Under the pieces are notes generated by a model, which worked only from the letters and a program-made list of their open reading frames with translations, did no database searches and was not told the origin of the DNA. A DNA stretch of 62,937 bases, filler included, from Octopus bimaculoides (taxonomy: Eukaryota), in the NCBI RefSeq assembly GCF_001194135.2. It is 6 parts of 6 records of this genome, joined end to end, with 100 filler letters (N's around TTAATTAATTAA, not from the genome) between each part and the next. Parts side by side here need not be neighbours in the genome. Positions count along the whole stretch, not along the records: positions 40,932 to 54,918 come from NC_068995.1; 5 more parts are not named here. The stretch is one strand, 5' to 3'. Made by a program: the position numbers and the translations under genes. Below, in pieces: positions 40,888-54,918 of this stretch; positions within the stretch are counted from its first letter, which is position 1; each line of letters starts with the position of its first letter.

Positions 40888-41635
40888 NNNNNNNNNNNNN
40901 NNNNNNNNNNNNNNNNNNNNNNNNNNNNNNNATATATATATATATATAATTCAAAAGAGTTCCAACTCTGTTTTTTATGTTTTATTTATATTCTTATAAA
41001 ATTAATGTGGAATATAAAATATGGAATATATAATATATATAGTAAAATGAAAGGAAGTATTGAATGTCTTATTGAATAAATGAAATATTGACTATCAAAT
41101 ATAAAAAGACTAGTATACTTTCCTGCTTTCTAACAGTCATCAAAGTCCCATGTGACAGAAATGTTTCAACTGTAGTTGACTGGCCGTCTTTTTGTCCTAT
41201 ATGCACATTCCTTTGGATAGCAGCAGAAAGTGTTTGGCTATTTTTAGAGATGATGCCAAACCATTTTTCAATGTTTATTTTTAGGAATGATGACATTTGA
41301 GAGATTTTTTGTGCTTTAGTTATAGGGATAAGATTTTAAAACTCCAAGTAAGATTCATTTAATCATTGTTTGTTAAGATTGGGTTTGAATTTCTTAATAA
41401 TGTCCTTTTCTTTCCGTTTTCTCTCAATTACATTCAGGTTGTAAAGTTTATGAAATGGAAATATAATATACTGGTGAATCTATGAATCATTGTTGGTGTT
41501 CTTATAACACATTTGATATGTTTGGAACTACACTTGGCAGTATCATGTCTCATGTTAAGCAGCAGGCTTACAGATGCATTTGTACGCCGAGCGATATTAC
41601 GCAATCATGAAATCTATCATCTCATCATCTTACTA

Positions 41636-42258
41636 TCAGGTCATCCCATAAGTTCTGTCCGAATTTTGAATAAAGAAAACAAGTGATCAAATGTTATATT
41701 TAATTGAAATTTAATCACTAATATACTTTCCCTGATTATCTATGGCTTCCTTCCATCTATTTACAAGCTTTTTAATCCCATCAATGTAAAACTCTTTTGG
41801 TTTCAAAGCGAAGAACTCTGAAATGTCAGTTTCGACCTGCTCCTGGCTTGCGAAAGTTATGTCCCCCAAATGATTCTGTAAACTACGAAACAAATGGTAG
41901 TCTGAAGGAGCAAGGTCTGGAGAATTAAGTGGATGATGAATTTTTTCCCAACCAAGCTCTTCGATCTTCTGTGATCTGATCTTTGCAGTGTGGGGTCGCG
42001 CATTGTCCTTAATGAAACGTCACTCCTTTTCAATTTACTAAAGCGGGTCTTTTTTTCTTCAAAGCTTTGTTCAAACGCTCTAATTGCTGAGAGTAGACTT
42101 GAGCATTGATTCTTGCATTAGCTGGTAACAATTCAAAGTGAATCACTCCTTTGCAATCCCACGAGATAGAGAGAAGAACTTTTCCCATGAAGTTCCCTTC
42201 GCGGTTGTGGTTGAGCGTTTATCCTTTTAACAAGATTGCTATAGATTGTATTGAGACC
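41636..42258 (-). mobile_element. Mariner transposon 3' half
   Basis: WDCKGVIHFELLP..YSQQLERL; DNARPH; SPDLAPSDYHLFRSLQN..NRWKEAIDNQGKYISD*; TA followed by TIR-like TCAGGTCATCCCATAAG at 41636. Confidence 0.9.
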
Positions 42259-42263
42259 CTCAA

Positions 42264-43685
42264 TCGCCGCTGTTTTTTTTTTCCTTTTCCGTTTAATCAT
42301 TTTGAATCTCTGTTAGACGTGAGTCGCATTGTTAATAATATGTTGATGGTCTCCCGTAAGGTTGAACCTAACTGTTGAACCTCATTGTGAAATCGTTGCG
42401 TTTTTAGTTACATTTTTTACTTGTGAAATTATGTATGTTTTATTCCCCATTTATGGGTGAAGCAGTAAGAAAAGTAAGGATGGAAAGCGAACCAGTTCCA
42501 GTGGACAGCTATGCTTCAGCCACTGGAAGAAGTTTAACTGCAGACGTGTTACAGGTTCGAGAGGTGAAGATGGAGAAAATAAGCTAAAGGAGTTCAATAG
42601 ACTTATCGAAAATATGGAATCAGTTTGAGGTTGGTCTCACCGCAAGATTTGACAGCTAGTGTAATGAAGCGGATAGTGGTATATAGAACGCTGTCCACAG
42701 CATCAAAAGAAATTCAAATAGCTACTGTGGAAGCCATAGAGGAGTGTTTGAAAGAGGTAAACAACCTCACAACATTCTATACCAGTGGGAAAAATTACGG
42801 CACAGTGGAGGTAAGATTCGAGAGCGAACAAGAAACGATAAACCACTCCACTGTGGCGCTAAGGACACCAGAGTGGGTAATTCTGCCGACTTACTGTGGC
42901 AGATGAGTGGCCAGGGTAAGAATTGGCAGAGTACCCCGGATATTGAGGAGGTGCGGCTCGTGGCATCCATTCTGTATAATATGCAGGAGGAAGCGATAGT
43001 TTTAAAAGTAACAATAACGAAAGAGGTAAACTTGTGGCGACACGGCCTCGAGGTGGCAATCCAAATCAGTTTACAAGACTTACACAAGATAGCGGAGGAG
43101 GGGAAACTTCCGGAGGAAGTGAGATTTAAGAGTGGTGGGAGAGAGAAGACCTCCAGCCTGTTACCAGTGTGGAGTAAGGGGTTACATGAGAGCAAGATAT
43201 ATGAGTGGGAAGTGTCCGGAGAAGGTAGAGGAGGAATACACGTAGTCAATAGGAAAAAAGAAAAGGAAGGAAAGGGTGGACTTACTGCCAAAAAGTCCAC
43301 TAAAGAAAAGGAAAACAAAATATAGAGGAAGCGACGCAGCAGGGGATTCCAAGAATATCAAGAAAGGAAGCCAAATTGGAAAATCAAGAGGAAATGCAGG
43401 AACAAGGAAGAACAAAAGAGCAAAAAAGAAATGATATATGGTGACATATTCGAAAAATACGGAGTTGAAAAAAGAATAACCAAAATGCAGTCGGTTATAA
43501 AAGTGAAGCTTACAATGTAATATTTTCCAGAGAGCTCCAAGACTCTTGCCATTGACAAGGAGAGATGTGCAAGATTGAGAGAATTGTTTGGAGATAAAGT
43601 AAACCTAGAAGGAGTGCGCGTGTTGTTCGATGACTTCCCGCCAGTAATACATTATGAGGACCTAATACCTTACATAAAATGGTAA
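42264..43685 (+). pseudogene. Decayed gag/ORF1-like unit 1 with conserved leader
   Basis: ATG 42480; SYASATG; GTVEVRF; degenerate zinc knuckle C-YQ-C-GVRG-Y-MRAR-Y (43159-43200); K/E-rich tail; stops and frameshifts; no RT follows. Confidence 0.65.
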
Positions 43686-43889
43686 AAAGGTAAATAAATG
43701 TTTGGAATTTTAATGACTTTAAATCTGATGCAAAAGGGAAAAAAACAGAGTAAAGAAAAAGGATATAGAAACGTTTAACTAAAATATTTAAAATGATACT
43801 GCTTGTGAATGTGGATCATGCAGCAATTTCACTTCCATTAATATAATTCAATCTTCAATCGTTCGTTCTATATTTTTTGTCCCCGTTTT

Positions 43890-44750
43890 GTTGTTCTGTC
43901 TGTTCTTGTGCCGTCCCCCACTGCGTATTAGCCTGAGTGCTCAAATAAAGAAAGGTGTAGTCGCCGCTGTTTTTCTGTTCCGTTTCCTCATTTTTGATCT
44001 CTGTTAGAGGTAAGTTATATTGTTAATTGTTTATTGAAGGTCTCCCCTCGTGGGTCTACCTTCCATTGTTGAAATTGTTGTTACTGTTTTTTGCATACGA
44101 GTTGTTGATTTGTGTTTGGTTTCTTTCCATTTAAGGGAGAACCTGAAAAGAGAGGAAGGATGGAATTTGGACAATCAGAAGGCCACAGTTATGCGGTAGC
44201 AGGTGGAAGAGAAGTGGAGTCAGTTGCGTTGGAGGATCGCGAAGTAAACGTAGAACCGAAGAAGCTAAACAGTGAAAAATCGTTGAAAGGGAAAGGAAAT
44301 ATTTTAAAATTAACACCACCAGAAGACCTAACGAACAGTGTGACAAACAGAACTGTAATATTTAAAACATTGTAGATGTCATCGAGAAAAATTGAAATTG
44401 CAAATATCGAAGATAATGTAGAATGCTTAAATGAACGCTTAATTCACCACTTTTATCACGATTGAAGAAAGTGTGGCACAGTGGGGGTGCGAACGCGAAT
44501 GAAGACGAAGCTATAAAACACACCACTGTGGCCATAAAAGCAGAAGAATGGGTACTGATGCCAACACACTGCGGATTGCCAGAGTGAGAATGAGAAAAGT
44601 GTCAACGGTAATAAACGAGACTTGGTTGGTTGTTGCTGCCACTACTGGAATTAAGATAACCAGAACTATTCATAAGATATTAAAAAAAGTGAAATTGCTT
44701 TTAAAAAAAGAAGAGAACAAAAATGATGCTAATGGAGAAAATACAGAGAA
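43890..44750 (+). pseudogene. Decayed gag/ORF1-like unit 2 with conserved leader
   Basis: ATG 44160; LTPPEDLTNSVTNRTVIFKTL and HTTVAIKAEEWVLMPTHCG align with unit 1 LVSPQDLTASVMKRIVVYRTL and HSTVALRTPEWVILPTYCG. Confidence 0.65.
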
Positions 44751-44899
44751 GAAAATTATTTATAAACTATTAGTAAAAACGTTCAAATGCCACTGCTTGA
44801 GATTGGGGCTCATGAAGCCATTTCAATCTTTATTTTTCGTTTTTCTATAATGTTTTTCTCATTATTCATTCGTGTTATGGGTTTTTTTTCCCACTTTAG

Positions 44900-45064
44900 T
44901 GTTCGGTCTGTCCTTGTGCTGTCCGCTCTGTGTAAGAGCCTAAGTGCTTAATAAAAGAATTAGTAGTCGCCGCTGTTTATTCTGTTCCGTTCAATCGTTT
45001 TTGATCCCTGTTAGACGTAAGTTGCATTGTTAATTGTCTGATTAAGGTCTCCCATAAAGGTGAA
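44900..45064 (+). repeat. Third copy of the gag-unit leader/terminal repeat
   Basis: AATAAA..TAGTCGCCGCTG..CTGTTAGACGTAAGT..GGTCTCCC, shared with 43890-44060 and (lacking the AATAAA part) 42264-42390. Confidence 0.85.
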
Positions 45065-45243
45065 CCGTTAGATTCTCTTCAACATTTAAATTTAATTTGC
45101 CAAAATATTTTCGTCACTTTGAGACCGCGACATGATCACTGAAAAAAATGGAGAAGGAATTTTTTTCAGTGATCATATTGCGGTTAAAAGCGACGAACAT
45201 ATTTTTGGCAAATTAAATTTAACTGTTGAAGTCAATCTAACGG
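45065..45243. mobile_element. Fold-back (hairpin) element, 85-bp arms, 9-nt loop
   Basis: 45065-45149 versus 45159-45243, about 88% identity by eye. Confidence 0.8.
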
Positions 45244-46151
45244 CTTTTGTGTGTTGTTAAATATGGCTTATAAACACCTTCCACGCTGCAATTGTTTTGG
45301 TATATATATATATATATATTTCGTATGTGTATTTCGTGTGCAAGATTCTTGATGTGGATACGTGTGTTGAAAGAAATACAATTAAACCTTGGGAGAGGCA
45401 TTATGCCGGTAATAAACACACGCACTGGTTCAGTCCTTTATTAATTTAATTTATATAGTTTTTTGTTAAANNNNNNNNNNNNNNNNNNNNNNNNNNNNNN
45501 NNNNNNNNNNNNNNNNNNNNNNNNNNNNNNNNNNNNNNNNNNNNNNNNNNNNNNNNNNNNNNNNNNNNNNNNNNNNNNNNNNNNNNNNNNNNNNNNNNNN
45601 NNNNNNNNNNNNNNNNNNNNNNNNNNNNNNNNNNNNNNNNNNNNNNNNNNNNNNNNNNNNNNNNNNNNNNNNNNNNNNNNNNNNNNNNNNNNNNNNNNNN
45701 NNNNNNNNNNNNNNNNNNNNNNNNNNNNNNNNNNNNNNNNNNNNNNNNNNNNNNNNNNNNNNNNNNNNNNNNNNNNNNNNNNNNNNNNNNNNNNNNNNNN
45801 NNNNNNNNNNNNNNNNNNNNNNNNNNNNNNNNNNNNNNNNNNNNNNNNNNNNNNNNNNNNNNNNNNNNNNNNNNNNNNNNNNNNNNNNNNNNNNNNNNNN
45901 NNNNNNNNNNNNNNNNNNNNNNNNNNNNNNNNNNNNNNNNNNNNNNNNNNNNNNNNNNNNNNNNNNNNNNNNNNNNNNNNNNNNNNNNNNNNNNNNNNNN
46001 NNNNNNNNNNNNNNNNNNNNNNNNNNNNNNNNNNNNNNNNNNNNNNNNNNNNNNNNNNNNNNNNNNNNNNNNNNNNNATAAGTCAATACAATGCGTTCGC
46101 ATATCTGCCAGTAGATATGGTATACTACAGAAAGCGTACAGTATTATATAT

Positions 46152-46250
46152 CTATTACTGCCGATCTTATCAATCGGTTTCGCACAAAGGCTTCATCGGA
46201 ATGTTAGGTAACAATCCGATTATGTAACCTTGTGCTCTTCAGATGTAGCT
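46152..46250 (-). ncRNA. Degenerate full-size type I hammerhead ribozyme motif
   Basis: CTGAAGA (46242-46236); stem II GCACAA/TTGTGC with a branched interior; GAAA (46181-46178); stem III CCGAT/ATCGG; but GCA instead of GUA and a weak stem I. Confidence 0.5.
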
Positions 46251-46827
46251 GTTTTAGAATTAATTATGGCAACTGCTCTCTAATGTTGGAGAAAAGACAC
46301 ATGTTTTTTTTTTTTTTTTAAATTAACAGCTCTGAAGAAAACCACTTTTTAAAAATATTTTCACTGTATGAAGTGTCTTTTTTTTTTATCAGAAACATTT
46401 AAATATGCAAACAACTAATATAAGATCGGAAGGTCACTGACATAATCAAAATCTCCTGTATATATTAATGCAAGGGAAACTGAGGCAATATCGAAAAAAG
46501 AAAATGTCAATCTTCACAAACTCATTTTTACAGAGAAAAATTAGAAAAAAATTGGAAAAAGAATCACGTTACAAACATTACAAACGTTGAATATGCCAAT
46601 ACACAAGTAATGTTTAATGAATGGAATAAACAACATTTGTAAAATTAAATTTACAGGAAGATGCACTAGGTGTAAAAGATGAGCATTAAATTAAAAAAAA
46701 TCAAGCGTACTGGAAATCAATTAGAAAGAGAAAATTTTCCAAAAACATTCGAACGAACAGAAAAGTAGGTGAAAATTAATAAATCTATAGAACAAATTAG
46801 AGAGAGAGAGAGAGAGAGACAGAGAGG

Positions 46828-46883
<56 letters not shown>

Positions 46884-48707
46884 CTAAATCTAATAAAATA
46901 CTAGAATAAGATATTATGGTTACAAAAATACAAATAAAAGTAATGATTAGTGAAAAGGGAAAATAGAATACGTACAAAATTTCATAAAAATATCAAGAAT
47001 ACAATAACTAACTAATTGTACAAGTCAATTCAACAAATAATCCAAGGGCGATAAACGATAATTTTCCACATGAAAGCATGATTAAAAATCGAAAAGAATT
47101 ATAATTGATAGCCAGTAACTCATACCAAGACAACACAGCTACTACAAATGCAAAATAATCACGCCCAATATGTACCACCTGGAGGATGCATGTTGAAACT
47201 GACCTTTGTTATCAAGGGACTGCATAAATTGGCCTTGCTTTCACACGATTTTTCTGCTGGTACATTACACCTTTCTTAATTCATTAACTGCTTCATATAT
47301 GCTCTTAATTTCTCATGTCTAATTGCCAGGCTCGCTATAGATTTTCCTTCAAAAAATTCATCCACACATGCATACCCACGCTCGCGCATACAAACTACTG
47401 AGAAACAGACAGTTACGCATATGGATAAAAGTCAGAAAGAAGTTGGACACAATATTGGCCTCAATCACAGCAATAATATAGCGATGAATTCACTCGAATT
47501 GGTTCGCATCTATGGTTATAGGTATTTAGTTACATTCTTCAATTAAAATATCTGTTCCGTCAATAGAGAAGCTAAGTTGATTTTCAGTTGCCGATTCAAA
47601 ATGCACTATATAATTTCTTACTATATTGAGAACTAGTGATCGCTGGGGCCAACACACTTCGCCTACCTCATTTCTCCATTTGCTACCAGTTTTAAAAACA
47701 TTAGTCCCTTAGTATCCTAGGAGATGGCGCTATATATAAATGATCAACTTATCATAGATTTACCTCCCTGTTTCACGGCAGGGGCAAGGCATTCAGGATT
47801 GAATGCCTTTATGTTTCCAGCCATAAACAAACCCCGTAAAGGAAAATGCGCTAGTAATGATTTTTCAGAGATGTAGTTATTACGCGCGTCATCGGCGACT
47901 TGTAATAGTCTAGTCACCCGTTTTATTGCCTATCAGTTTTGCTAAGTGAGAAAAGATGTTTAGTAATTGTAGCCCTCTCAAAGTAACTAGCTCTAGGGAG
48001 AACATGACGAATGGTTTTGTTTGTAACTAGATTTCTGATGTGGTGCTTTATATCGGCTGTCACTTTTGGAGCCGTAGCGCGGGGTTTTAGATACAATAAG
48101 TTTCGCTATCCTGCCATCCCTCTGTGAGTTTTGCTTTACATGGAGGATTTACTTTTGCCAAGATTTTGGAAAGCCTCAATGATTTTAAAAACACTGTAGT
48201 TGCATCTTCAAATATACACACTTCAACAATTTATCTTCTGATATTTCATGCTTTTTCGTTTTTGTAAAAATAAAGAATAGCAAATAAAGAATATCAGAGG
48301 TTTATATAAGAGGTAAGAAGAATATATAGTGCATATGTACACACACATGCAGGCAACAGTTGTTTTGAATTTTCCCATCATCCAAATAACAACTGAAAAA
48401 TAAAAATGTTTTCATTAATTCACACATTGATTTACATACATTGTATACCAAAGTTATTTGTGCGTTAAAATCCATGCAAACGAAAAGAGAAAACGAATCA
48501 TCTTAGATTTATACATGATTTATTCCACGTGGACTATTTGCTAAGGCTAACCCCGCCCCAGTTTTAGTAGAATGTATTGTTATTAATCACATTATGGTTT
48601 TTACTTTATATTGCATCTTTAACACTTGAATCGGTTATATTTCCTATATTCCTGATATCCTTGTGAGAATATGGATACCTTACTGATAATGTTCAAAACA
48701 GAAGGTA

Positions 48708-49330
48708 CAAGGTTCATTCCAGAAATCTAGATATTTCTTTATCAGGACAGTCTTTTATTTATTTCAAAGTGTTATAAAACTCGAATACTCTTCAAAGTAG
48801 ACTTCACTGACTCTATTGCAATGGGTGCAGCGTTCCAGCTACGTCGTGAAAGTCCTCCAAATTGCAGCTATCCAGGATCCTTGAAACAGTCTCTGTCATC
48901 TTCACCGTGAGTTTGGCGAACAACCAGATATCATAGGAACCAAATGGTGTAGAGCGATAGGAAGGGACTATTTTCGTGCTCATCTCAGTTAACTAGTTGG
49001 TTACCAAATGGAATTTTATACTGGCGCATTGTTCTGGTGCAGTTTCTTTGACTGTTTCGATGAAATATCTCCCTGAACTTCCTCAAATCCCAAAAGTAAT
49101 TCCTTGTTGATTGCTTGGTTAGAGGGAATCAAGTGGATGTAGATGATGCATTTACGGACAAAAAAGCGGATCATCATAAGATTTCTGATGGACTTGCTTT
49201 TCAGGGCTTCTTGTGCCAGCGAAAAACAGTTTCTCGGTTCATGCAATTAATGCGTAAGCGGCCTGGAGCCTTCCATGTGTTTCTGTAAAGTGATTGCCAA
49301 GTTTAATAAAAAAAATCTTATTGCGTATCG
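48708..49330 (-). mobile_element. Decayed mariner transposase fragment
   Basis: LHQNNAPV; PYRSTPFGSYDIWLFAKL (degenerate PYSPDLAPxDFWLF); WLERCTHC..YFE; TA plus TIR-like CAAGGTTCATTCC at 48708. Confidence 0.7.
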
Positions 49331-49859
49331 GTCTTCTTAATTGTCTTCATGTCCCTATTGCATTCTGGAAACATGTCAGCTGTAACAATCAGTAACAGGG
49401 ATGTTCAAAGTACTGTCCAAATCTTCTCCTTCAAAATGGAATAAAAAATGTCTGTAGGTCAGATTATAAGATATATATTAATGCTATACGAAACTCACAA
49501 CAACGTAGGGCAATTGTGGATACCTCTCCTAACAATAAATAAAAGAAACTATAAATCTATTCTTAAATAAATTCATGGAAATTTAGAATCTTACTACTGA
49601 TCTATTTTCCACCATATCTATTGCAAATGAGACATGATTCATTGTCCTGTATCATTGTTTTCCTTGGTGTTTTGTTAATGTGTAAATGATAAACTTGAGT
49701 GCGAGGACACCAGAGACAATCAGATAAATTCCGGCATTTTCTCTATCAACAATTTTTGGCATTCAGCAAGCGTTAACAAGTGTTAATTGCAGCACTATAT
49801 TAAAATGTCCGCAACACCTAACGTATGTATGATCCTGAACATCTGAAAACGGCGTTTTT

Positions 49860-50365
49860 TCTTTTGCTATAAGGAAGCTGTCATACTATAGATTCTAGAG
49901 TTTTTATGAGGGGTGTTACTTTGACATTTAACATTGTGCAAGAATTTGCGCAGGTCATTTCTTTGAAAAATACAAATATCGGATCAGAATTATACGATAG
50001 CTTCACAAATTGGGTGATTCAATTTAACTTAGACTTAACGAATCTGGCTGTTTTGAGCACTGATGGAGCATCAAAAATGATTCGTGAGAAAGAAGGTGTA
50101 GTATCTTTAATTCAAGGACGGCTTGGTGAACAATAAATACTATTGAAGCTGCATTGCATTATACATCATGGTGCGTCGTGTGCGAAGACACTCCGATTCA
50201 AGAACATCATGAAATCAGTGCATTTCATCCTATCGAGATGACTCAATCAATGCCAGTTTGGGAGTTCCTTAACCAGAGAGGGCTTGAGTATGCTGACCTA
50301 ACTTATTTCAGCAATATTCGTTGGCTAAGTCGAGGCAAAATGTTTGCACATTTTTTTATTTTTTG
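49860..50365 (+). mobile_element. hAT (Charlie/Buster-like) transposase fragment
   Basis: STDGASKM..EGVV, LHCIIHH..CAK, DLTYFSNIRWLSRGKMF. Confidence 0.85.
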
Positions 50366-50559
50366 AGAGAAGAAAAGGTCAAATACGACTTGACCGGGAC
50401 AATAATTATACGCGCTAGTTCCTATAACAGTCTATCCCACCCTTTTCCGCTCTTTCAAATGATTTTATGTATTAGTCTCTGGATATTATGGAAATATATG
50501 GCACCACAAGACGCACCCAATTGGTACAATTGTTCTATCTAAATCAGCGGTCAATTATT

Positions 50560-51520
50560 AAGACACTGAAAACGTTTTGTCGGCACTTTCAAGTGACAGA
50601 TTCTCCAAGAGAAAACACAGATAGGAACTGAGTTAGTCGCTTTCAAAAACGAGCGGCAGTAAGTAATCTTCTACGATATGGAGGCCTCGTACTATCAGAA
50701 CAAATGAGGCAAGAGAACGATTGCGAAAGAGTGTTGTATAAAATCCGGGCAATCTAGACAGAAGGTTGCCTAGACAGCATGGGATTCAAGAACTTCGCTG
50801 CAAAGACTTCTCCACAAACGTAATATTTTTCCGATACAATATAGAATTTCTTCAACAGTTGAAGCCTCATGACAATAAAAGCAAGTACCGATAAGCTGTC
50901 ACAATCCAGGAATTGGCACGAAATGACCCAATTTTTATACAGAAACTGGTCATGTCCGATGAAACTTACTTTCCTTTAAATGGGCTCATAAACAGACAAG
51001 ATTGCCGGTTTTGGGTCACTGAGAATCCGAAAGCAGTACAATAAAGAGAATGCACCACAAAGTGGACATTATGGTATGCAATTACGCGAATGAGATAATT
51101 GGGACTTATTTCTACTCAGGACAGCGATGGGAATGCTGTCACTGTGACTGGTGAGTAGTACATGTCCACAACCGAGAGCTTTTGGCGCTCGGCCATTCAA
51201 AGTAGGCCCGATGTTTAGTTCTAGCAAGATGGAGCAACGACTCATACCACAAGAAACATAATACAGTTACTGAGCTAATGTTTTAGAGAAAGAATCATCT
51301 CGCGCTACTGCAATGTAAAGATTCCCCACACTTGTCTAGCGCAGACGACTTATTGTGGGGATACCTAAAAGAGTAGTTTTATGACAGAAAATAATGTCTG
51401 CAAGTAAAGGAGAATATCACTAGAGAAATCAGGAAAATGGAATCTGACATTCTTACAGCAGTAATGGAACATATTTTGGAAGGGCACGCATAAGTATAGT
51501 TGAAAATATACGCAAATATA
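50560..51520 (+). mobile_element. Tc1/mariner superfamily (maT-like) transposase remnant
   Basis: MSDETYFPLNGLINRQDCRFW..ENP; GNAVTVTGE; QDGATTHT; LLWGYLKE; multiple stops. Confidence 0.8.
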
Positions 51521-51698
51521 CGAAATTGCGTCATGTTGCTATTAATTTAACAGACCCTACCACACTAAGTAGTTGACAAAATAGTAAAAACAATGCGCAA
51601 GCACGACATTAAAATATAAGATCGTGACAATTTACTCATCGTAACATTTATGTATATATANNNNNNNNNNNNNNNNNNNNNNNNNNNNNNNNNNNNNN

Positions 51699-51732
<34 letters not shown>

Positions 51733-52076
51733 CTATCAAATGCGCTCAATGTACCAGTCAATTAGATACTGTAGTTGAAACGTCGAACATTGTAATATTA
51801 CAATAGGCGACATTTTCTATCAACAGTGTGAGCGATTAAAAAAGGGCAAGTTAAGATGTTAAGGATAAGACTCGTGATTACAACTAACGTTCAATATGAA
51901 TTGATTAACAGCCAGTGGTTAGCTACAAGTTTAATTATTGTTTTTTTTTTGTGTGTGTTTAGCCAAACAATACTAGATAATTTCGGCGTGTCCGATCACG
52001 TTTAATCTTTTGGGAAAAACTAACACTTAACTGTCTCAAACGACATACTATATATAAGAAAATGATAAAAGATTAT

Positions 52077-52225
<149 letters not shown>

Positions 52226-52749
52226 ACAGAAGAAAAACATGTAGATAGAAAGATCAATAGGAAGAAAAAGAAAGGTAGGTAGAGAGGAGGAGTCTCGAAA
52301 GAAATAGTATACTCTATTTAAAGGCGATTACGTACAGAAGTTAATACTTCGTACAACACTGCTAGGCACGTACGGAAATCATCAACATTGCTTCATACAT
52401 TTGAACAAAATCTTTACTGCTACACCGATCCGGAGGTCACGATATCTAAAAACATTCATGATATGGCATGCTTAAATATATGAACAATTTTCTGTTTCCA
52501 TTTCATAAACATAGACCGTCAGACGAAAGGCAAGCTAATTCAAACTATTTGAGTTATAGCGAAATTATATACACAACATTTTAATCTGATAAACAATCTG
52601 TATGACAATACTTTTATTTAAGGGCACCTGTGAAAAAATCCTCTAGTTTCAAATATATTAAGGAAATATTCAGAAGGACGCAATATACGTTGAAACGTTT
52701 AACATCGAAGGAAAGATTAAAACGGAATATTTCTATTCAATTATTCACC

Positions 52750-53898
52750 ATGAAATTGATAATTGCCTTAATTGTTATATCAATCGGAAGCGCTTCTACA
52801 GAAGAAAACGACCTTCAATATGAATTACTCAGATACTATGATAAAACAATGACACCTGTTGATGCAAATGAGACCACGTTAAGCCTATATGTGACACTTA
52901 GCATAAAGAATATTATTGAATTAGACATTAAGCAAGGTATTCTAACAAGTCATCTGATGCTCGGCATAAGATGGCAGGACAATAATCTGAAATGGAATGA
53001 TTCAATGTCTAGTCGAAACCATATAGATGTTACCTTATCTAAGATTTGGTATCCTAATATTCAAATATGTAATAGTGTATCAGGTGATTTCAGTTTCGAT
53101 GTGGACAAGGAAGTCACTGTCAAATACGATGGGTTCGTTCACTTACATATAGACAAAATATTTAAAACATACTGCAGGATTAACGTTGAAAATTATCCTT
53201 TTGATCAGCACGAATGTGATATAACTGTTTGCCTTGAACATCAGATGTATATGGAGGAAACAATAGAGGACTTTGTTATCGATGTAAAATTAAAAACTAA
53301 ATCAAATCAATGGAATTTCTCTTTTGAAGAGACTGAGATGGAAAAGGATGATGTTATAGCAGCTGGTCTTATAGTTTACGGCAAGAGAAAAGTTAGCAGT
53401 GCAACAATAACAAAAATTATACCCCCAATAATGTTAACATTATTGGTCCTTTCCGTTCATGTATTGCCAGCCTCATCTGGAGAGAAAGTTTGTGCTGCAA
53501 TAACTGTTTTTCTTACAAACATCGTTTTCCTTTCTGAAACTGAAAAGATATTGGGTAATAATTCTCAGGATCCCTCTTTATATCTAATCTATCTTTTAAT
53601 TCTGACATTTGTCAGTGGATGTTCCTCTATCGAATCAGTAATTGTGTGTAAACTTTATGCCCAACAGACTGGATCAGACATCAATTTAACTCCAGAAATT
53701 GCACGAGAATCAAAAGGATCCAGAAATAGTGTTGGTGTCATTGAAAACTCAGATGAACAGAATATTAAAGTAAGAGATATAAACCTTTCTAAAAGACATT
53801 TTATAAACTATCAGAAGCTAGACAAAATATTTTTGTCAATAGTTGTTATATTCCTAGTAGTACTTTATATAATTTTTGCTTTGTCGAGTTCTTACTAA
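52750..53898 (+). CDS. Intronless atypical nAChR-like Cys-loop channel subunit, chemotactile-receptor (CR)-like, 382 aa
   Basis: CACCATG start; signal peptide MKLIIALIVISIGSAS; IWYPNI; Cys-loop C-RINVENYPFDQHE-C (53173-53217); four TM segments; GEK before M2; no vicinal CC; uninterrupted ORF. The GTG-started 40-aa extension in the ORF track is probably untranslated. Confidence 0.93.
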   Translation: MKLIIALIVISIGSASTEENDLQYELLRYYDKTMTPVDANETTLSLYVTLSIKNIIELDIKQGILTSHLMLGIRWQDNNLKWNDSMSSRNHIDVTLSKIWYPNIQICNSVSGDFSFDVDKEVTVKYDGFVHLHIDKIFKTYCRINVENYPFDQHECDITVCLEHQMYMEETIEDFVIDVKLKTKSNQWNFSFEETEMEKDDVIAAGLIVYGKRKVSSATITKIIPPIMLTLLVLSVHVLPASSGEKVCAAITVFLTNIVFLSETEKILGNNSQDPSLYLIYLLILTFVSGCSSIESVIVCKLYAQQTGSDINLTPEIARESKGSRNSVGVIENSDEQNIKVRDINLSKRHFINYQKLDKIFLSIVVIFLVVLYIIFALSSSY

Positions 53899-53929
53899 GG
53901 CTTAGAAAAAAGTAGACTGAAACCATTCT

Positions 53930-53935
53930 AATAAA
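53930..53935 (+). terminator. Candidate polyadenylation signal
   Basis: AATAAA 32 nt after the stop codon, followed by an A-rich run at 53941-53957. Confidence 0.5.
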
Positions 53936-54875
53936 TAATGAAAAGAAAAAAAAAAACAAGCATCAGAAGGCAATGCAGAATCTGCGTACACACTAAGTTA
54001 AAACAAAATTTGATTAAAAATACACCTCTTCAGCCGAATTCATAATTCAACAAAATGGCATCAAAAGTTATTTGCCTTCCTTATCGTTTACGTGTATGTC
54101 CGCCAGTTTTGAAGATAAATCAACATTTAATGATTTCGAGACACTCACCTAATGGTATTTCTGTCGAATGTGGTGAAATTCCGTTCAGCCGCTTTCATAT
54201 AATTTTGCAAACACAAAAACAAACAGACTATGTCGAGCAACTACAACAACCTACGCGCGAAAGCGAAGCGAAGGTGACTAACAAATACCTAACTGAATGC
54301 GCATAAATTCTATATTTCATCTAAGAGCCATTTGAAGAGTTGACGCAGACAAGTGAATTTTGAATACACCGGCTTTCAGCACAATCTCCAGTACGCTTTT
54401 AAAATAATGTTGTTAGGCAACATGTCTTTCTTCACCTCAAGTTTGACATAATGTGCTATAGACACTTCAAAACGACTATCTCTTGAAAGAGACACAGTCG
54501 GGTTGTCTCCTAAATCCTAAACCCCCACTTACCACGTCACACCCGCACACATACCCACAAATGATAACAGTTCAAGTTTCTACTCACCTACCTCGGTAGG
54601 CTTTCTCGCTTGCACTGCGCGACACACATACACGCCCATAAAAAATACACAAAAATATAGAATTTTTACTTTTCAGACATGTTTCTTTTGTGATGAATAC
54701 TAACGTTTCGATACATTAAAATGCACTACATTTGGGTGTTGTGTTCTTGAAGCAATCATTTCTTTTCCTAATCCTCCAGTACACTCGACACTAAAGAAGG
54801 GACACTGAAGCACATTAGAATTCCATTCAAGTGGAGCGTTATGATCTCGGTCATTTATACATTTTGGAAACTGTG

Positions 54876-54918
<43 letters not shown>

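What the first reader, a model, noticed from the sequence alone, without database searches (positions are those of the whole stretch)
52900..53391. ACh aromatic box absent and loop C about 7 residues shorter
By-eye alignment to alpha7 (numbering from ATG 52750): loop A Tyr becomes Cys107 (IQICN), loop B Trp becomes Glu (VCLE), loop D Trp becomes Met (SHLMLG). From the beta9 Trp to the pre-M1 basic cluster is 27 residues (WNFSFEETEMEKDDVIAAGLIVYGKRK) versus 34 in alpha7, with no CC and no YxCC/PY tyrosines. The remaining loop is strongly acidic (EETEMEKDD), which hints at an open pocket and perhaps cationic ligands or pH sensitivity.
Basis: partly seen in the sequence, partly recalled or inferred. 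Interest (0 to 1): 0.7.

Follow-up and report, generated by a model that had tools for sequence, protein, structure and literature searches.

The report
An uncharacterised octopus chemotactile receptor gene
This is one of the Octopus bimaculoides "taste-by-touch" chemotactile receptor genes, whose loss of the acetylcholine-binding residues and short loop C are already published for the family, although this copy has an unusually polar, histidine- and acid-rich pocket that nobody has tested.

Summary
The intronless ORF 52750-53898 (+) encodes a 382-aa Cys-loop receptor subunit. A MAFFT alignment to a verified human alpha7 sequence puts Met70, Cys107 and Glu163 at the loop D Trp, loop A Tyr and loop B Trp positions. 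Loop C is 7 residues shorter and has no vicinal Cys or Tyr.

These are family traits, not features of this gene alone. The window is Octopus bimaculoides chromosome CM046615.1. The best solved relative by sequence (E 1e-50) and by fold (TM 0.85) is the octopus chemotactile receptor CRT1. The gene sits in a same-strand tandem array of paralogs. Held papers already describe CRs as ACh-insensitive, intronless nAChR derivatives with a remodelled pocket and a short loop C.

Three things are specific to this copy:
- At 13 pocket positions it has 6 ionisable and 0 aromatic residues, against 0 and 5 in CRT1.
- Its loop C tip is acidic (EETEMEKDD), but paralogs range from -6 to +4 in net charge.
- Cys107 covaries perfectly with Cys161, which suggests a loop A-loop B disulfide.

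dN/dS against the O. vulgaris copy is 0.20 in M1-M3 and about 1.0 in the ectodomain. The suggestions of cationic ligands or pH sensitivity remain untested.

The parts
52750..53898 (+). Complete intronless coding sequence (382 aa plus stop) of a chemotactile receptor (CR) subunit. It is identical to the gene at CM046615.1:38,387,352-38,388,500 of Octopus bimaculoides.
   Evidence: ORF list and translation. Pfam Neur_chan_LBD 5e-32. Exact-match gene call on GCA_001194135.2. The window is identical to that locus over 10 kb upstream and 1 kb downstream.
52750..52797 (+). Predicted signal peptide, aa 1-16 (MKLIIALIVISIGSAS).
   Evidence: Hydrophobic N-terminus shared with the paralogs (MKLI...), alignment. 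The cleavage site is inferred. The upstream in-frame GTG at 52630 is an artefact of bacterial-style ORF calling.
52798..53391 (+). Extracellular ligand-binding domain, aa 17-214.
   Evidence: Pfam LBD match over aa 21-189. AF2 model shows an N-terminal helix plus a beta-sandwich. Foldseek top hit is 8EIS.
52957..52959 (+). Loop D position: Met70. This is Trp55 in alpha7 and ligand-contacting Tyr58 in CRT1.
53068..53070 (+). Loop A position: Cys107. This is Tyr93 in alpha7 and Cys96 in CRT1. It is the predicted disulfide partner of Cys161.
   Evidence: Covariation with Cys161 is 31 (C,C), 171 (neither) and 0 mixed.
53140..53154 (+). Loop E strand HLHID, aa 131-135. His131, His133 and Asp135 align with alpha7 Gln117, Leu119 and Pro121, and with CRT1 Asn120, Trp122 and Phe124.
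   Evidence: CRT1 W122 and F124 are ligand contacts confirmed by mutagenesis.
53173..53217 (+). Signature Cys-loop, Cys142-x13-Cys156, with the YPFD motif.
   Evidence: C142, P150, D152 and C156 are invariant in alignments A1 and A3.
53230..53241 (+). Loop B, CLEH, aa 161-164. Cys161 is the partner of Cys107. Glu163 is at the alpha7 Trp149 position. His164 is at the position of CRT1 Leu153, the 'back wall' of the CRT1 pocket, and is invariant in 21 of 23 members of this clade.
53311..53391 (+). Beta9-loop C-beta10 hairpin and pre-M1 basic cluster, aa 188-214. It is 7 residues shorter than in alpha7, has no Cys-Cys and no Tyr-x-Cys-Cys or Pro-Tyr, and has an acidic tip EETEMEKDD.
   Evidence: In the AF2 model the strands are 188-199 and 202-213, with a two-residue turn at Asp200-Asp201.
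53392..53670 (+). Transmembrane helices M1-M3, aa 215-307. M2 is aa 243-268, with -1' Glu245 (GEK), 2' Cys248, 6' Thr, 9' Leu and 13' Val.
   Evidence: AF2 helices 217-236, 245-268 and 277-307. Alignment to alpha7 and CRT1 M2. dN/dS 0.20.
53671..53808 (+). Short M3-M4 intracellular loop, about 46 aa. It is predicted to be disordered.
   Evidence: pLDDT below 50 for aa 310-349. Alpha7 has a loop about 100 residues longer in alignment A1.
53809..53889 (+). M4 helix, aa 354-380.
   Evidence: AF2 helix 354-380.

Best explanation
The ORF is an intact member of the octopus chemotactile receptor (CR) family. CRs are intronless, tandemly duplicated descendants of nicotinic acetylcholine receptors that form pentameric cation channels in sucker sensory cells.

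Shown here:
- It has the Cys-loop receptor fold, with four transmembrane helices.
- It is closest to CRT1 in both sequence and predicted fold.
- All five aromatic-box positions and the vicinal Cys pair are replaced.
- Loop C is a tight hairpin 7 residues shorter than in alpha7.
- The channel core evolves under purifying selection while the ectodomain evolves at a rate close to neutral.

Inferred:
- Without the box and a capping loop C it cannot bind acetylcholine through cation-pi contacts.
- A ligand instead occupies the remodelled interface pocket, as in CRT1.
- Binding is coupled through the conserved Cys-loop YPFD motif and pre-M1 Arg213 to an M2 pore with a 9' Leu gate and a -1' Glu ring, which admits cations.
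- Cys107 (at the loop A Tyr position) probably forms a disulfide with Cys161 in loop B.

This copy and its clade carry His, Asp and Glu where CRT1 has the aromatic and aliphatic residues that hold terpenoids, beta-carbolines and steroids. Its ligand range is therefore probably different from CRT1's and more polar. The ligand is unknown.
For: - Source and gene structure: the sequence is an exact match to O. bimaculoides CM046615.1, as a single-exon 382-aa gene call.
- Pfam: Neur_chan_LBD at 5e-32.
- PDB sequence search: CRT1 (8EIS, 9E6B) at E 1e-50 over aa 13-377, squid CRB1 at 8e-27, nAChR subunits at 1e-24 or weaker.
- Structure: AF2 model with pLDDT 74. The Foldseek top hit is 8EIS_A, with target-normalised TM 0.85 and rmsd 3.1 A.
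- Tree: a neighbour-joining tree places the protein inside a cephalopod clade made of the CRB1-like group, its own clade and the CRT1 clade. This tree has no bootstrap support values.
- Box residues: the replacements and the loop C deletion appear in two independent alignments.
- Genomic context: same-strand paralogs lie at 38.153, 38.171 and 38.362 Mb, with this gene at 38.387 Mb. CRT1-clade genes are on the same chromosome.
- Selection: dN/dS is 0.20 in M1-M3 and 1.01 in the ectodomain. ORFs are intact in O. vulgaris and O. sinensis.
- Pore: the GEK motif, 9' Leu, Arg213 and the Cys-loop are invariant.
- Literature: held papers describe CRs as ACh-insensitive, lacking the signature ligand motifs, intronless, with a short loop C and a pocket under diversifying selection.
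Against: - No expression or functional data for this paralog were available here.
- I could not confirm that it is one of the 26 published CRs by name, because the primary papers are not in the library.
- An ectodomain dN/dS of about 1 fits relaxed constraint as well as diversifying selection.
- The pocket is not hydrophobic like the published CR consensus: 6 of 13 positions are ionisable and none is aromatic. The 'works like CRT1' part is therefore the weakest link.
Pocket geometry, loop C capping and the Cys107-Cys161 bond were not measured.
Confidence: 0.85

Rival explanations
1. It is a CR tuned to cationic or polar ligands, metal ions or protons. The acidic loop C tip, together with His131, His133 and Asp135 on the complementary face and Glu163 and His164 on the principal face, would form a titratable or metal- or amine-binding site. 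This would be functionally convergent with the zinc- and proton-activated channel ZAC.
For: - Six of 13 pocket-homologous positions are ionisable and none is aromatic. This is the highest ionisable count among 35 sampled CRs, tied with three of its four O. vulgaris/O. sinensis relatives and one paralog.
- His164 is invariant in the clade, at the position where CRT1 has the hydrophobic Leu153. Hydrophilic substitutions there lower CRT1's affinity for its ligands.
- The ionisable residues are retained in the O. vulgaris and O. sinensis copies.
- ZAC also has a very short loop C, and acidic residues in its loop C and Cys-loop were examined as zinc-site candidates.
- The ectodomain has net charge -14.
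Against: - Loop C charge ranges from -6 to +4 among close paralogs, and the segment evolves fastest.
- Side-chain orientation was not verified in three dimensions.
- Every CR ligand known so far is poorly soluble and hydrophobic.
- ZAC is a more distant relative (E 1.6e-19) than the nAChRs, so any similarity would be convergence.
- Seawater is buffered near pH 8 with high divalent cation levels, which limits the usefulness of a simple proton or divalent sensor. This last point is my own inference.
Confidence: 0.15
2. It is an accessory or structural CR subunit that does not bind ligand at its own interfaces. It would work only in heteropentamers, tuning permeation or trafficking.
For: - CR subunits are reported to combine into diverse multimeric complexes, and only some could be probed in expression systems.
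- The pocket lacks every aromatic that CRT1 uses.
- The vestibule residue that gives CRT1 its high Ca2+ permeability (Glu104) is Ser115 here, and the pore has an unusual 2' Cys. Both suggest distinct permeation.
Against: - The pocket residues His164, Asp135, Cys107 and Cys161 are conserved across the clade. That argues for a constrained site rather than a dead one.
- There is no direct evidence either way.
Confidence: 0.15
3. It is a decaying retrocopy or pseudogene in a fast-turnover tandem array, and the missing box residues reflect loss of function.
For: - Overall pairwise dN/dS is 0.80 and ectodomain dN/dS is 1.0.
- Neighbouring array members include truncated or odd gene models: P0014, P0015 and P0016 at 272-296 aa.
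Against: - The 382-aa ORF is intact with all domains, and full-length copies are intact in O. vulgaris (2) and O. sinensis (2).
- M1-M3 dN/dS is 0.20, against a synonymous divergence of 0.15.
- The structural residues are invariant: the Cys-loop, Arg213 and GEK.
- The same 'missing' residues occur in CRT1, which is a working channel.
Confidence: 0.05
4. It is a genuine cholinergic receptor subunit, as the database names imply ('acetylcholine receptor subunit beta-type unc-29-like', 'alpha-7-like'). It would act as a non-alpha partner.
For: - Automatic names given to the orthologues and paralogs.
- Significant similarity to nAChR beta and gamma subunits, at about 1e-24.
Against: - It lacks both the principal-face residues (Tyr93, Trp149, Tyr188, Cys190, Cys191, Tyr195) and the complementary-face loop D Trp that non-alpha subunits keep.
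- The Asp of the WxPD motif is Asn103.
- It is much closer to CRT1 than to any nAChR.
- CRs are reported not to respond to ACh.
Confidence: 0.03

Closest known systems
Octopus bimaculoides CRT1 (chemotactile receptor for terpenes 1; PDB 8EIS, 9E6B, 9YI4; UniProt A0A0L8FVQ9)
   Same: - Same species and same chromosome.
- Intronless, about 380 aa, with a short intracellular loop.
- Best hit by sequence (E 1e-50) and by fold (TM 0.85).
- Cys at the loop A Tyr position, paired with a Cys in loop B.
- No Trp at the loop B position and no vicinal Cys.
- Loop C of 26-27 residues from the beta9 Trp to the pre-M1 Arg, against 33 in alpha7.
- GEK and 9' Leu in the pore.

   Different: - Only 29% identical, and in a sister clade.
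- CRT1's ligand contacts Y39, Y58, W122, F124, V151, L153, S169, L191 and F192 are S51, M70, H133, D135, L162, H164, K180, V202 and I203 here. Over the 13 pocket positions CRT1 has 0 ionisable and 5 aromatic residues; this protein has 6 and 0.
- Vestibule Glu104 is Ser115 here.
- Loop C is one residue shorter and much more acidic (-5 against -2).
Squid CRB1 (bitter-tastant chemotactile receptor; PDB 8EIZ)
   Same: - Same cephalopod CR clade.
- Same 7-residue loop C deletion, with no CC.

   Different: - 24% identity.
- CRB1 keeps Tyr at the loop A position and lacks both Cys107 and Cys161 equivalents.
- It retains several pocket aromatics.

Human alpha7 nicotinic acetylcholine receptor (PDB 7EKI, 7KOO and others)
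   Same: - Same superfamily fold, with the Cys-loop, pre-M1 Arg, cationic GEK -1' ring, 9' Leu and 13' Val.
- The ancestral type from which CRs derive.

   Different: - 22% identity.
- All five aromatic-box residues and the Cys190-Cys191 pair are absent.
- Loop C is 7 residues shorter.
- The Asp of WxPD is Asn.
- The intracellular loop is about 100 residues shorter.
- No introns.

Zinc-activated channel ZAC (PDB 8WGE, 8YX6, 9LET)
   Same: - A Cys-loop cation channel with a very short loop C and no aromatic box.
- Acidic residues in loop C and the Cys-loop are implicated as candidates for cation sensing.

   Different: - It is a more distant relative (E about 1e-19) than the nAChRs.
- It is a vertebrate lineage, and any functional likeness would be convergent and is untested.
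Expanded intronless nAChR-like genes of lophotrochozoans (for example Alvinella Alpo4 and the bivalve expansions)
   Same: - Intronless and arranged in tandem arrays.
- Loss of the signature ligand motifs.
- Many have loop C of 26-28 residues without CC.

   Different: - Different clades.
- Ligands are mostly unknown.
- The Cys107/Cys161 pair occurred only in the 31 sequences that I assign to the cephalopod CR clades, on the strength of a subset tree and a few names.

Membership tests
Cephalopod chemotactile receptors (CRs) | Pentameric ligand-gated channel subunit fold: Cys-loop C-x13-C, beta-sandwich ectodomain and four transmembrane helices | tested here: met
   Pfam LBD at 5e-32. Cys142-Cys156 are invariant. 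The AF2 model shows M1-M4. Foldseek gives more than 1000 pLGIC hits.
Cephalopod chemotactile receptors (CRs) | Closer to characterised CRs than to canonical nAChRs | tested here: met
   CRT1 at E 1e-50, against 2e-24 for the best nAChR. The Foldseek top hit is 8EIS. The neighbour-joining tree places it in the CR clade, but without bootstrap support.
Cephalopod chemotactile receptors (CRs) | Canonical ACh-coordinating residues replaced (aromatic box and vicinal Cys) | tested here: met
   W55M, Y93C and W149E, with no Tyr or CC in loop C.
Cephalopod chemotactile receptors (CRs) | Intronless coding sequence in a tandem cluster in the octopus genome | tested here: met
   Single 1149-nt ORF and a single-exon gene call. 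There are three paralogs within 235 kb on the same strand. The family trait is cited.
Cephalopod chemotactile receptors (CRs) | Hydrophobic orthosteric pocket suited to poorly soluble ligands | tested here: inconclusive
   At positions homologous to CRT1's ligand contacts this protein has 6 of 13 ionisable and 0 aromatic residues, against 0 and 5 in CRT1. This is sequence-level evidence only. No pentamer geometry was available.
Cephalopod chemotactile receptors (CRs) | Expressed in sucker chemosensory cells; insensitive to ACh; gated by contact chemicals | not testable with these tools
   This needs RNA-seq or in situ data and electrophysiology. Only CRT1, CR840 and a few other CRs have been probed.
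Nicotinic acetylcholine receptors (functional cholinergic subunits) | Principal face: loop A Tyr, loop B Trp, loop C Tyr-x-Cys-Cys and Tyr | tested here: not met
   The corresponding residues are Cys107, Glu163, and Thr195, Met197, Glu198 and Val202.
Nicotinic acetylcholine receptors (functional cholinergic subunits) | Complementary face: loop D Trp, which is kept by non-alpha subunits | tested here: not met
   Met70 is at the alpha7 Trp55 position.
Nicotinic acetylcholine receptors (functional cholinergic subunits) | Cation-selective M2: -1' Glu with no Pro insertion, and a 9' Leu gate | tested here: met
   SGEK with Glu245, and 9' Leu, aligned to alpha7 M2. This feature is shared with CRs, so it does not discriminate between the two families.
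Zinc-activated channel (ZAC) type | Orthology or closest similarity to ZAC; activation by Zn2+, Cu2+ or H+ | tested here: not met
   ZAC chains score E 1.6e-19 to 1e-17, weaker than nAChRs and far weaker than CRT1. Activation is not testable here.

The most novel reading that the evidence does not exclude
This paralog, and perhaps its whole clade with invariant His164 and near-invariant Asp135, is not a sensor of greasy molecules like CRT1. Instead it would detect polar or cationic compounds, metal ions or protons through a His/Asp/Glu-lined interface pocket under an acidic, truncated loop C. That would extend octopus 'taste by touch' to a second chemical class and give a ZAC-like solution evolved independently within the nAChR lineage.
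Probability: 0.12. Interest if true: 0.6.

Novelty: already known. Interest (0 to 1): 0.22.

Why it matters
The absent aromatic box and the short loop C are the textbook signature of how octopus chemotactile receptors diverged from acetylcholine receptors. Finding them here mainly confirms that the scan can recognise a CR gene.

The residual value lies in this particular copy. Only a handful of the roughly 26 O. bimaculoides CRs have been de-orphanised, and all known ligands are hydrophobic. A clade whose pocket swaps CRT1's aromatics for His, Asp and Glu is a sensible place to look for a different ligand class. It is also a good test of how far pocket diversification has widened the octopus's chemical range. 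The perfectly covarying Cys107/Cys161 pair is a simple sequence marker for part of the cephalopod CR clade: every sampled member of this gene's clade and most of the CRT1 clade have it, and the CRB1-like group mostly lacks it.

Tried and rejected
- The three primary CR papers (van Giesen 2020, Allard 2023, Kang 2023) and the Current Biology primer are not held, whether looked up by DOI or by PMC id. Family-level statements therefore rest on held papers that cite them. I could not match this gene to a published CR number. A search for CR names in the mating preprint found none.
- The word-indexed homology search reached only 16 and then 22 relatives. The exhaustive representative search was needed for family breadth.
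- Model coordinates are not exposed to scripts. I therefore could not measure the Cys107-Cys161 distance, pocket volume or side-chain orientation. A pentamer (1910 aa) exceeds the predictor's size limit.
- Pseudogene reading: rejected as the main explanation, because of the intact ORFs and the M1-M3 dN/dS of 0.20.
- True nAChR subunit: rejected, because the residues of both binding faces are missing.
- A second CR gene or fragment in the piece: none found by tblastn.
- Other ORFs in the piece: no credible Pfam hit. No tRNA and no Rfam family were found.
- Pocket conservation between species: 10 of the 13 pocket positions are identical between P0001 and P0002. I did not compute the ectodomain-wide identity, so I make no claim of special constraint on the pocket.
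Full report
**What is there.** The piece (40932-54918) contains one substantial gene, an uninterrupted ORF on the + strand. Bacterial-style ORF calling starts it at GTG 52630. The ATG at 52750, in the context caccATGa, gives a 382-aa protein that begins with a hydrophobic signal sequence, as all its paralogs do. Pfam finds the neurotransmitter-gated channel ligand-binding domain (5e-32) and a weaker match to the transmembrane region.

An exact-sequence look-up places the protein on Octopus bimaculoides chromosome CM046615.1 (GCA_001194135.2) at 38,387,352-38,388,500, as a single-exon gene call. The window is identical to that record over 10 kb upstream and 1 kb downstream. The protein is already present in NCBI, UniRef and EukProt.

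**Checking the observation.** I then aligned it with the window protein, CRT1, squid CRB1 and 13 paralogs using MAFFT. I repeated the mapping with an HMM alignment of 217 domains. Both give the same answer:

| alpha7 residue | Loop | Window protein |
|---|---|---|
| Trp55 | D | Met70 |
| Tyr93 | A | Cys107 |
| Trp149 | B | Glu163 |
| Tyr188, Cys190, Cys191, Tyr195 | C | Thr195, Met197, Glu198, Val202 |

Loop C carries a 7-column deletion. The Asp of the WxPD motif is also lost (Asn103).

The tip EETEMEKDD is the densest acidic 9-mer in an already acidic ectodomain (34 acidic of 198 residues). A cluster that dense appears somewhere in 9% of shuffles, and at that fixed position with P = 0.001. 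The acidity is real but only moderately remarkable.

**What it is.** Against all solved structures, the best sequence matches are the octopus chemotactile receptor CRT1 (9E6B and 8EIS, E 1e-50, aligned over aa 13-377) and then squid CRB1 (8e-27). nAChR subunits start at 2e-24 and ZAC at about 1e-19.

An AlphaFold2 model built on 22 relatives has mean pLDDT 74 and pTM 0.62. It shows the N-terminal helix, the beta-sandwich, M1-M4 and a disordered 46-residue intracellular loop. Beta9 (188-199) and beta10 (202-213) form a tight hairpin with a two-residue turn at Asp200-Asp201. Its best structural match in the PDB is 8EIS chain A, with TM 0.85 on the target and rmsd 3.1 A.

A neighbour-joining tree puts the protein in a cephalopod clade made of the CRB1-like group, its own clade and the CRT1 clade, nested among lophotrochozoan nAChR-like sequences. 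The tree has no bootstrap support values.

Paralogs at 52-61% identity lie on the same strand at 38.153, 38.171 and 38.362 Mb of the same chromosome. CRT1-clade genes are also on that chromosome. This is the published picture of the CR family:
- about 26 intronless, tandemly arrayed genes in O. bimaculoides, derived from nAChRs;
- no response to ACh and no signature ligand motifs;
- a remodelled pocket under diversifying selection;
- a loop C that has been noted as short.

Intronless tandem nAChR expansions in molluscs generally are described.

**Is it a working gene?** I compared it with the 78%-identical O. vulgaris copy, whose DNA was fetched, using Nei-Gojobori dN/dS:

| Region | dN/dS |
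|---|---|
| Whole gene | 0.80 |
| M1-M3 | 0.20 |
| Ectodomain | 1.01 |
| 27 loop C codons | 1.75 (13 nonsynonymous, 2 synonymous differences) |

Flanking DNA is 78-84% identical and the coding sequence 88% identical. O. vulgaris and O. sinensis each carry two intact copies in the same 90% cluster, so one-to-one orthology is not certain. A constrained channel core combined with a free-running ectodomain fits a functional, diversifying receptor better than a pseudogene. Relaxed constraint on the ectodomain cannot be excluded from a pairwise comparison.

**What is specific to this copy.** Two preprints define CRT1's ligand contacts by cryo-EM and mutagenesis: Y39, Y58, W122, F124, C150, V151, L153, S169, L191 and F192, plus vestibule E104. 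The numbering matches the 8EIS chain index.

The homologous residues here are S51, M70, H133, D135, C161, L162, H164, K180, V202 and I203, with S115 at the vestibule position. Adding the positions of alpha7 Y93, Q117 and W149 makes 13 pocket positions. Over these 13:

| Protein | Pocket string | Ionisable | Aromatic |
|---|---|---|---|
| Window protein | SMCHHDCLEHKVI | 6 | 0 |
| CRT1 | YYCNWFCVALSLF | 0 | 5 |

Six ionisable residues is the highest count among 35 sampled CRs. It is tied with three of its four O. vulgaris/O. sinensis relatives and one paralog.

His164 is invariant in 21 of 23 members of the clade. In CRT1 that position is Leu153, described as the conserved back wall of the pocket, where Gln or Asn substitutions lower affinity. 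This clade's pocket is therefore clearly not CRT1-like at the sequence level.

Loop C charge, in contrast, is not a clade property. It runs from -6 to +4 among close paralogs and from -2 to -5 in the O. vulgaris and O. sinensis copies.

**A refinement of 'Tyr becomes Cys107'.** Across 202 aligned domains, Cys at the loop A position and Cys at the loop B position (161) are present together in 31 and absent together in 171. They are never present singly. The 31 appear to fall in the cephalopod CR clades, judged from the subset tree and the few named sequences. This covariation strongly suggests a loop A-loop B disulfide. I could not measure it, because no coordinates were available.

**Mechanism.**

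Shown:
- the fold;
- the absence of every cation-pi and vicinal-Cys element on both binding faces;
- a truncated hairpin loop C;
- a conserved Cys-loop YPFD motif, pre-M1 Arg213, a GEK -1' Glu ring, and 6' Thr, 9' Leu and 13' Val in M2.

Inferred, by analogy with CRT1:
- subunits assemble into homo- or heteropentamers;
- a ligand binds the open interface pocket;
- the signal passes through the Cys-loop and pre-M1 region to open a cation pore.

Ser115 in place of CRT1 Glu104, which tunes Ca2+ permeability, and an unusual 2' Cys suggest different permeation. The ligand is unknown. The polar, titratable pocket argues for a range different from CRT1's hydrophobic agonists. ZAC, which is activated by Zn2+ and has an even shorter loop C with acidic candidate residues, is a functional analogy worth testing. 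It is not a relative.

**Comparison and verdict.** The gene meets every testable CR criterion: fold, closest relatives, lost ACh residues, and an intronless tandem gene. It fails the nAChR binding-site criteria on both faces.

The only new material is descriptive: the His- and acid-rich pocket of this clade, the covarying Cys pair and the rate contrast between domains. I rate novelty as 'already known' and interest as low. There is a modest chance (about 0.12) that the polar pocket marks a truly different ligand class.

**Limits.**
- No expression data were available.
- The model is a monomer without accessible coordinates.
- The neighbour-joining tree has no support values.
- The loop F and loop C alignments between clades are uncertain.

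Noticed in passing
window 53491-53493 (Cys248, M2 2' position): The pore-lining 2' residue is Cys in this protein and in its O. vulgaris and O. sinensis counterparts. It is Ser in all other aligned paralogs, in CRT1 and in alpha7. It could affect permeation or redox and metal sensitivity of the pore.
   Followed up: no
window 53092-53094 (Ser115): The position of CRT1 Glu104, the vestibule ring that confers high Ca2+ permeability, and of alpha7 Asp101 is Ser here. Asp113 and Asp117 lie nearby. This hints at lower Ca2+ permeability than in CRT1.
   Followed up: partly
window 53068-53070 and 53230-53232 (Cys107, Cys161): The two Cys residues co-occur perfectly across 202 aligned pLGIC domains: 31 have both, 171 have neither and none has only one. 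This points to a loop A-loop B disulfide, apparently restricted to cephalopod CR clades. Squid CRB1-like proteins mostly lack both.
   Followed up: partly
window 45471-46077 and 51661-51698: Runs of N, which are assembly gaps, lie inside the piece. The long 'ORFs' of X residues in the ORF list are artefacts of the first gap.
   Followed up: yes
window 46732-46913 and 52015-52238: There are two (AG)n/(CT)n microsatellite tracts, the second about 500 bp upstream of the CR start codon. They create spurious minus-strand ORFs made of Ser-Leu repeats.
   Followed up: yes
window 42279-42355, 43970-44046, 44977-45053: Three direct copies (79-100% identity) of a 77-nt element, spaced 1.0-1.7 kb apart. 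The neighbouring ORFs share a motif (LTASVMKRIVVYRTL and LTNSVTNRTVIFKTL). This is probably a repeated mobile-element remnant. It has no Pfam match.
   Followed up: partly
L005 (CM046615.1:38,152,401-38,156,952), protein P0015: The array member at 38.153 Mb is annotated as a 296-aa product over a 2.5-kb gene range. It does not translate colinearly, and its C-terminus diverges after M2-M3. It is either a spliced or mis-modelled gene or a degenerating CR copy.
   Followed up: no
proteins P0027, P0028, P0040, P0046, P0080 and others: Many top representatives are 600-1500 aa with two to five consecutive ligand-binding domains. These are probably neighbouring tandem-array genes fused by gene predictors, in unnamed source genomes, rather than real multi-domain receptors.
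   Followed up: no
protein cluster of P0002 (O. vulgaris CAI9734024.1 and CAI9734023.1; O. sinensis XP_029646605.2 and XP_036366080.1): The closest relatives occur as two copies more than 90% identical in each of O. vulgaris and O. sinensis, against one copy found in O. bimaculoides. This points to a recent lineage-specific duplication of this CR.
   Followed up: no
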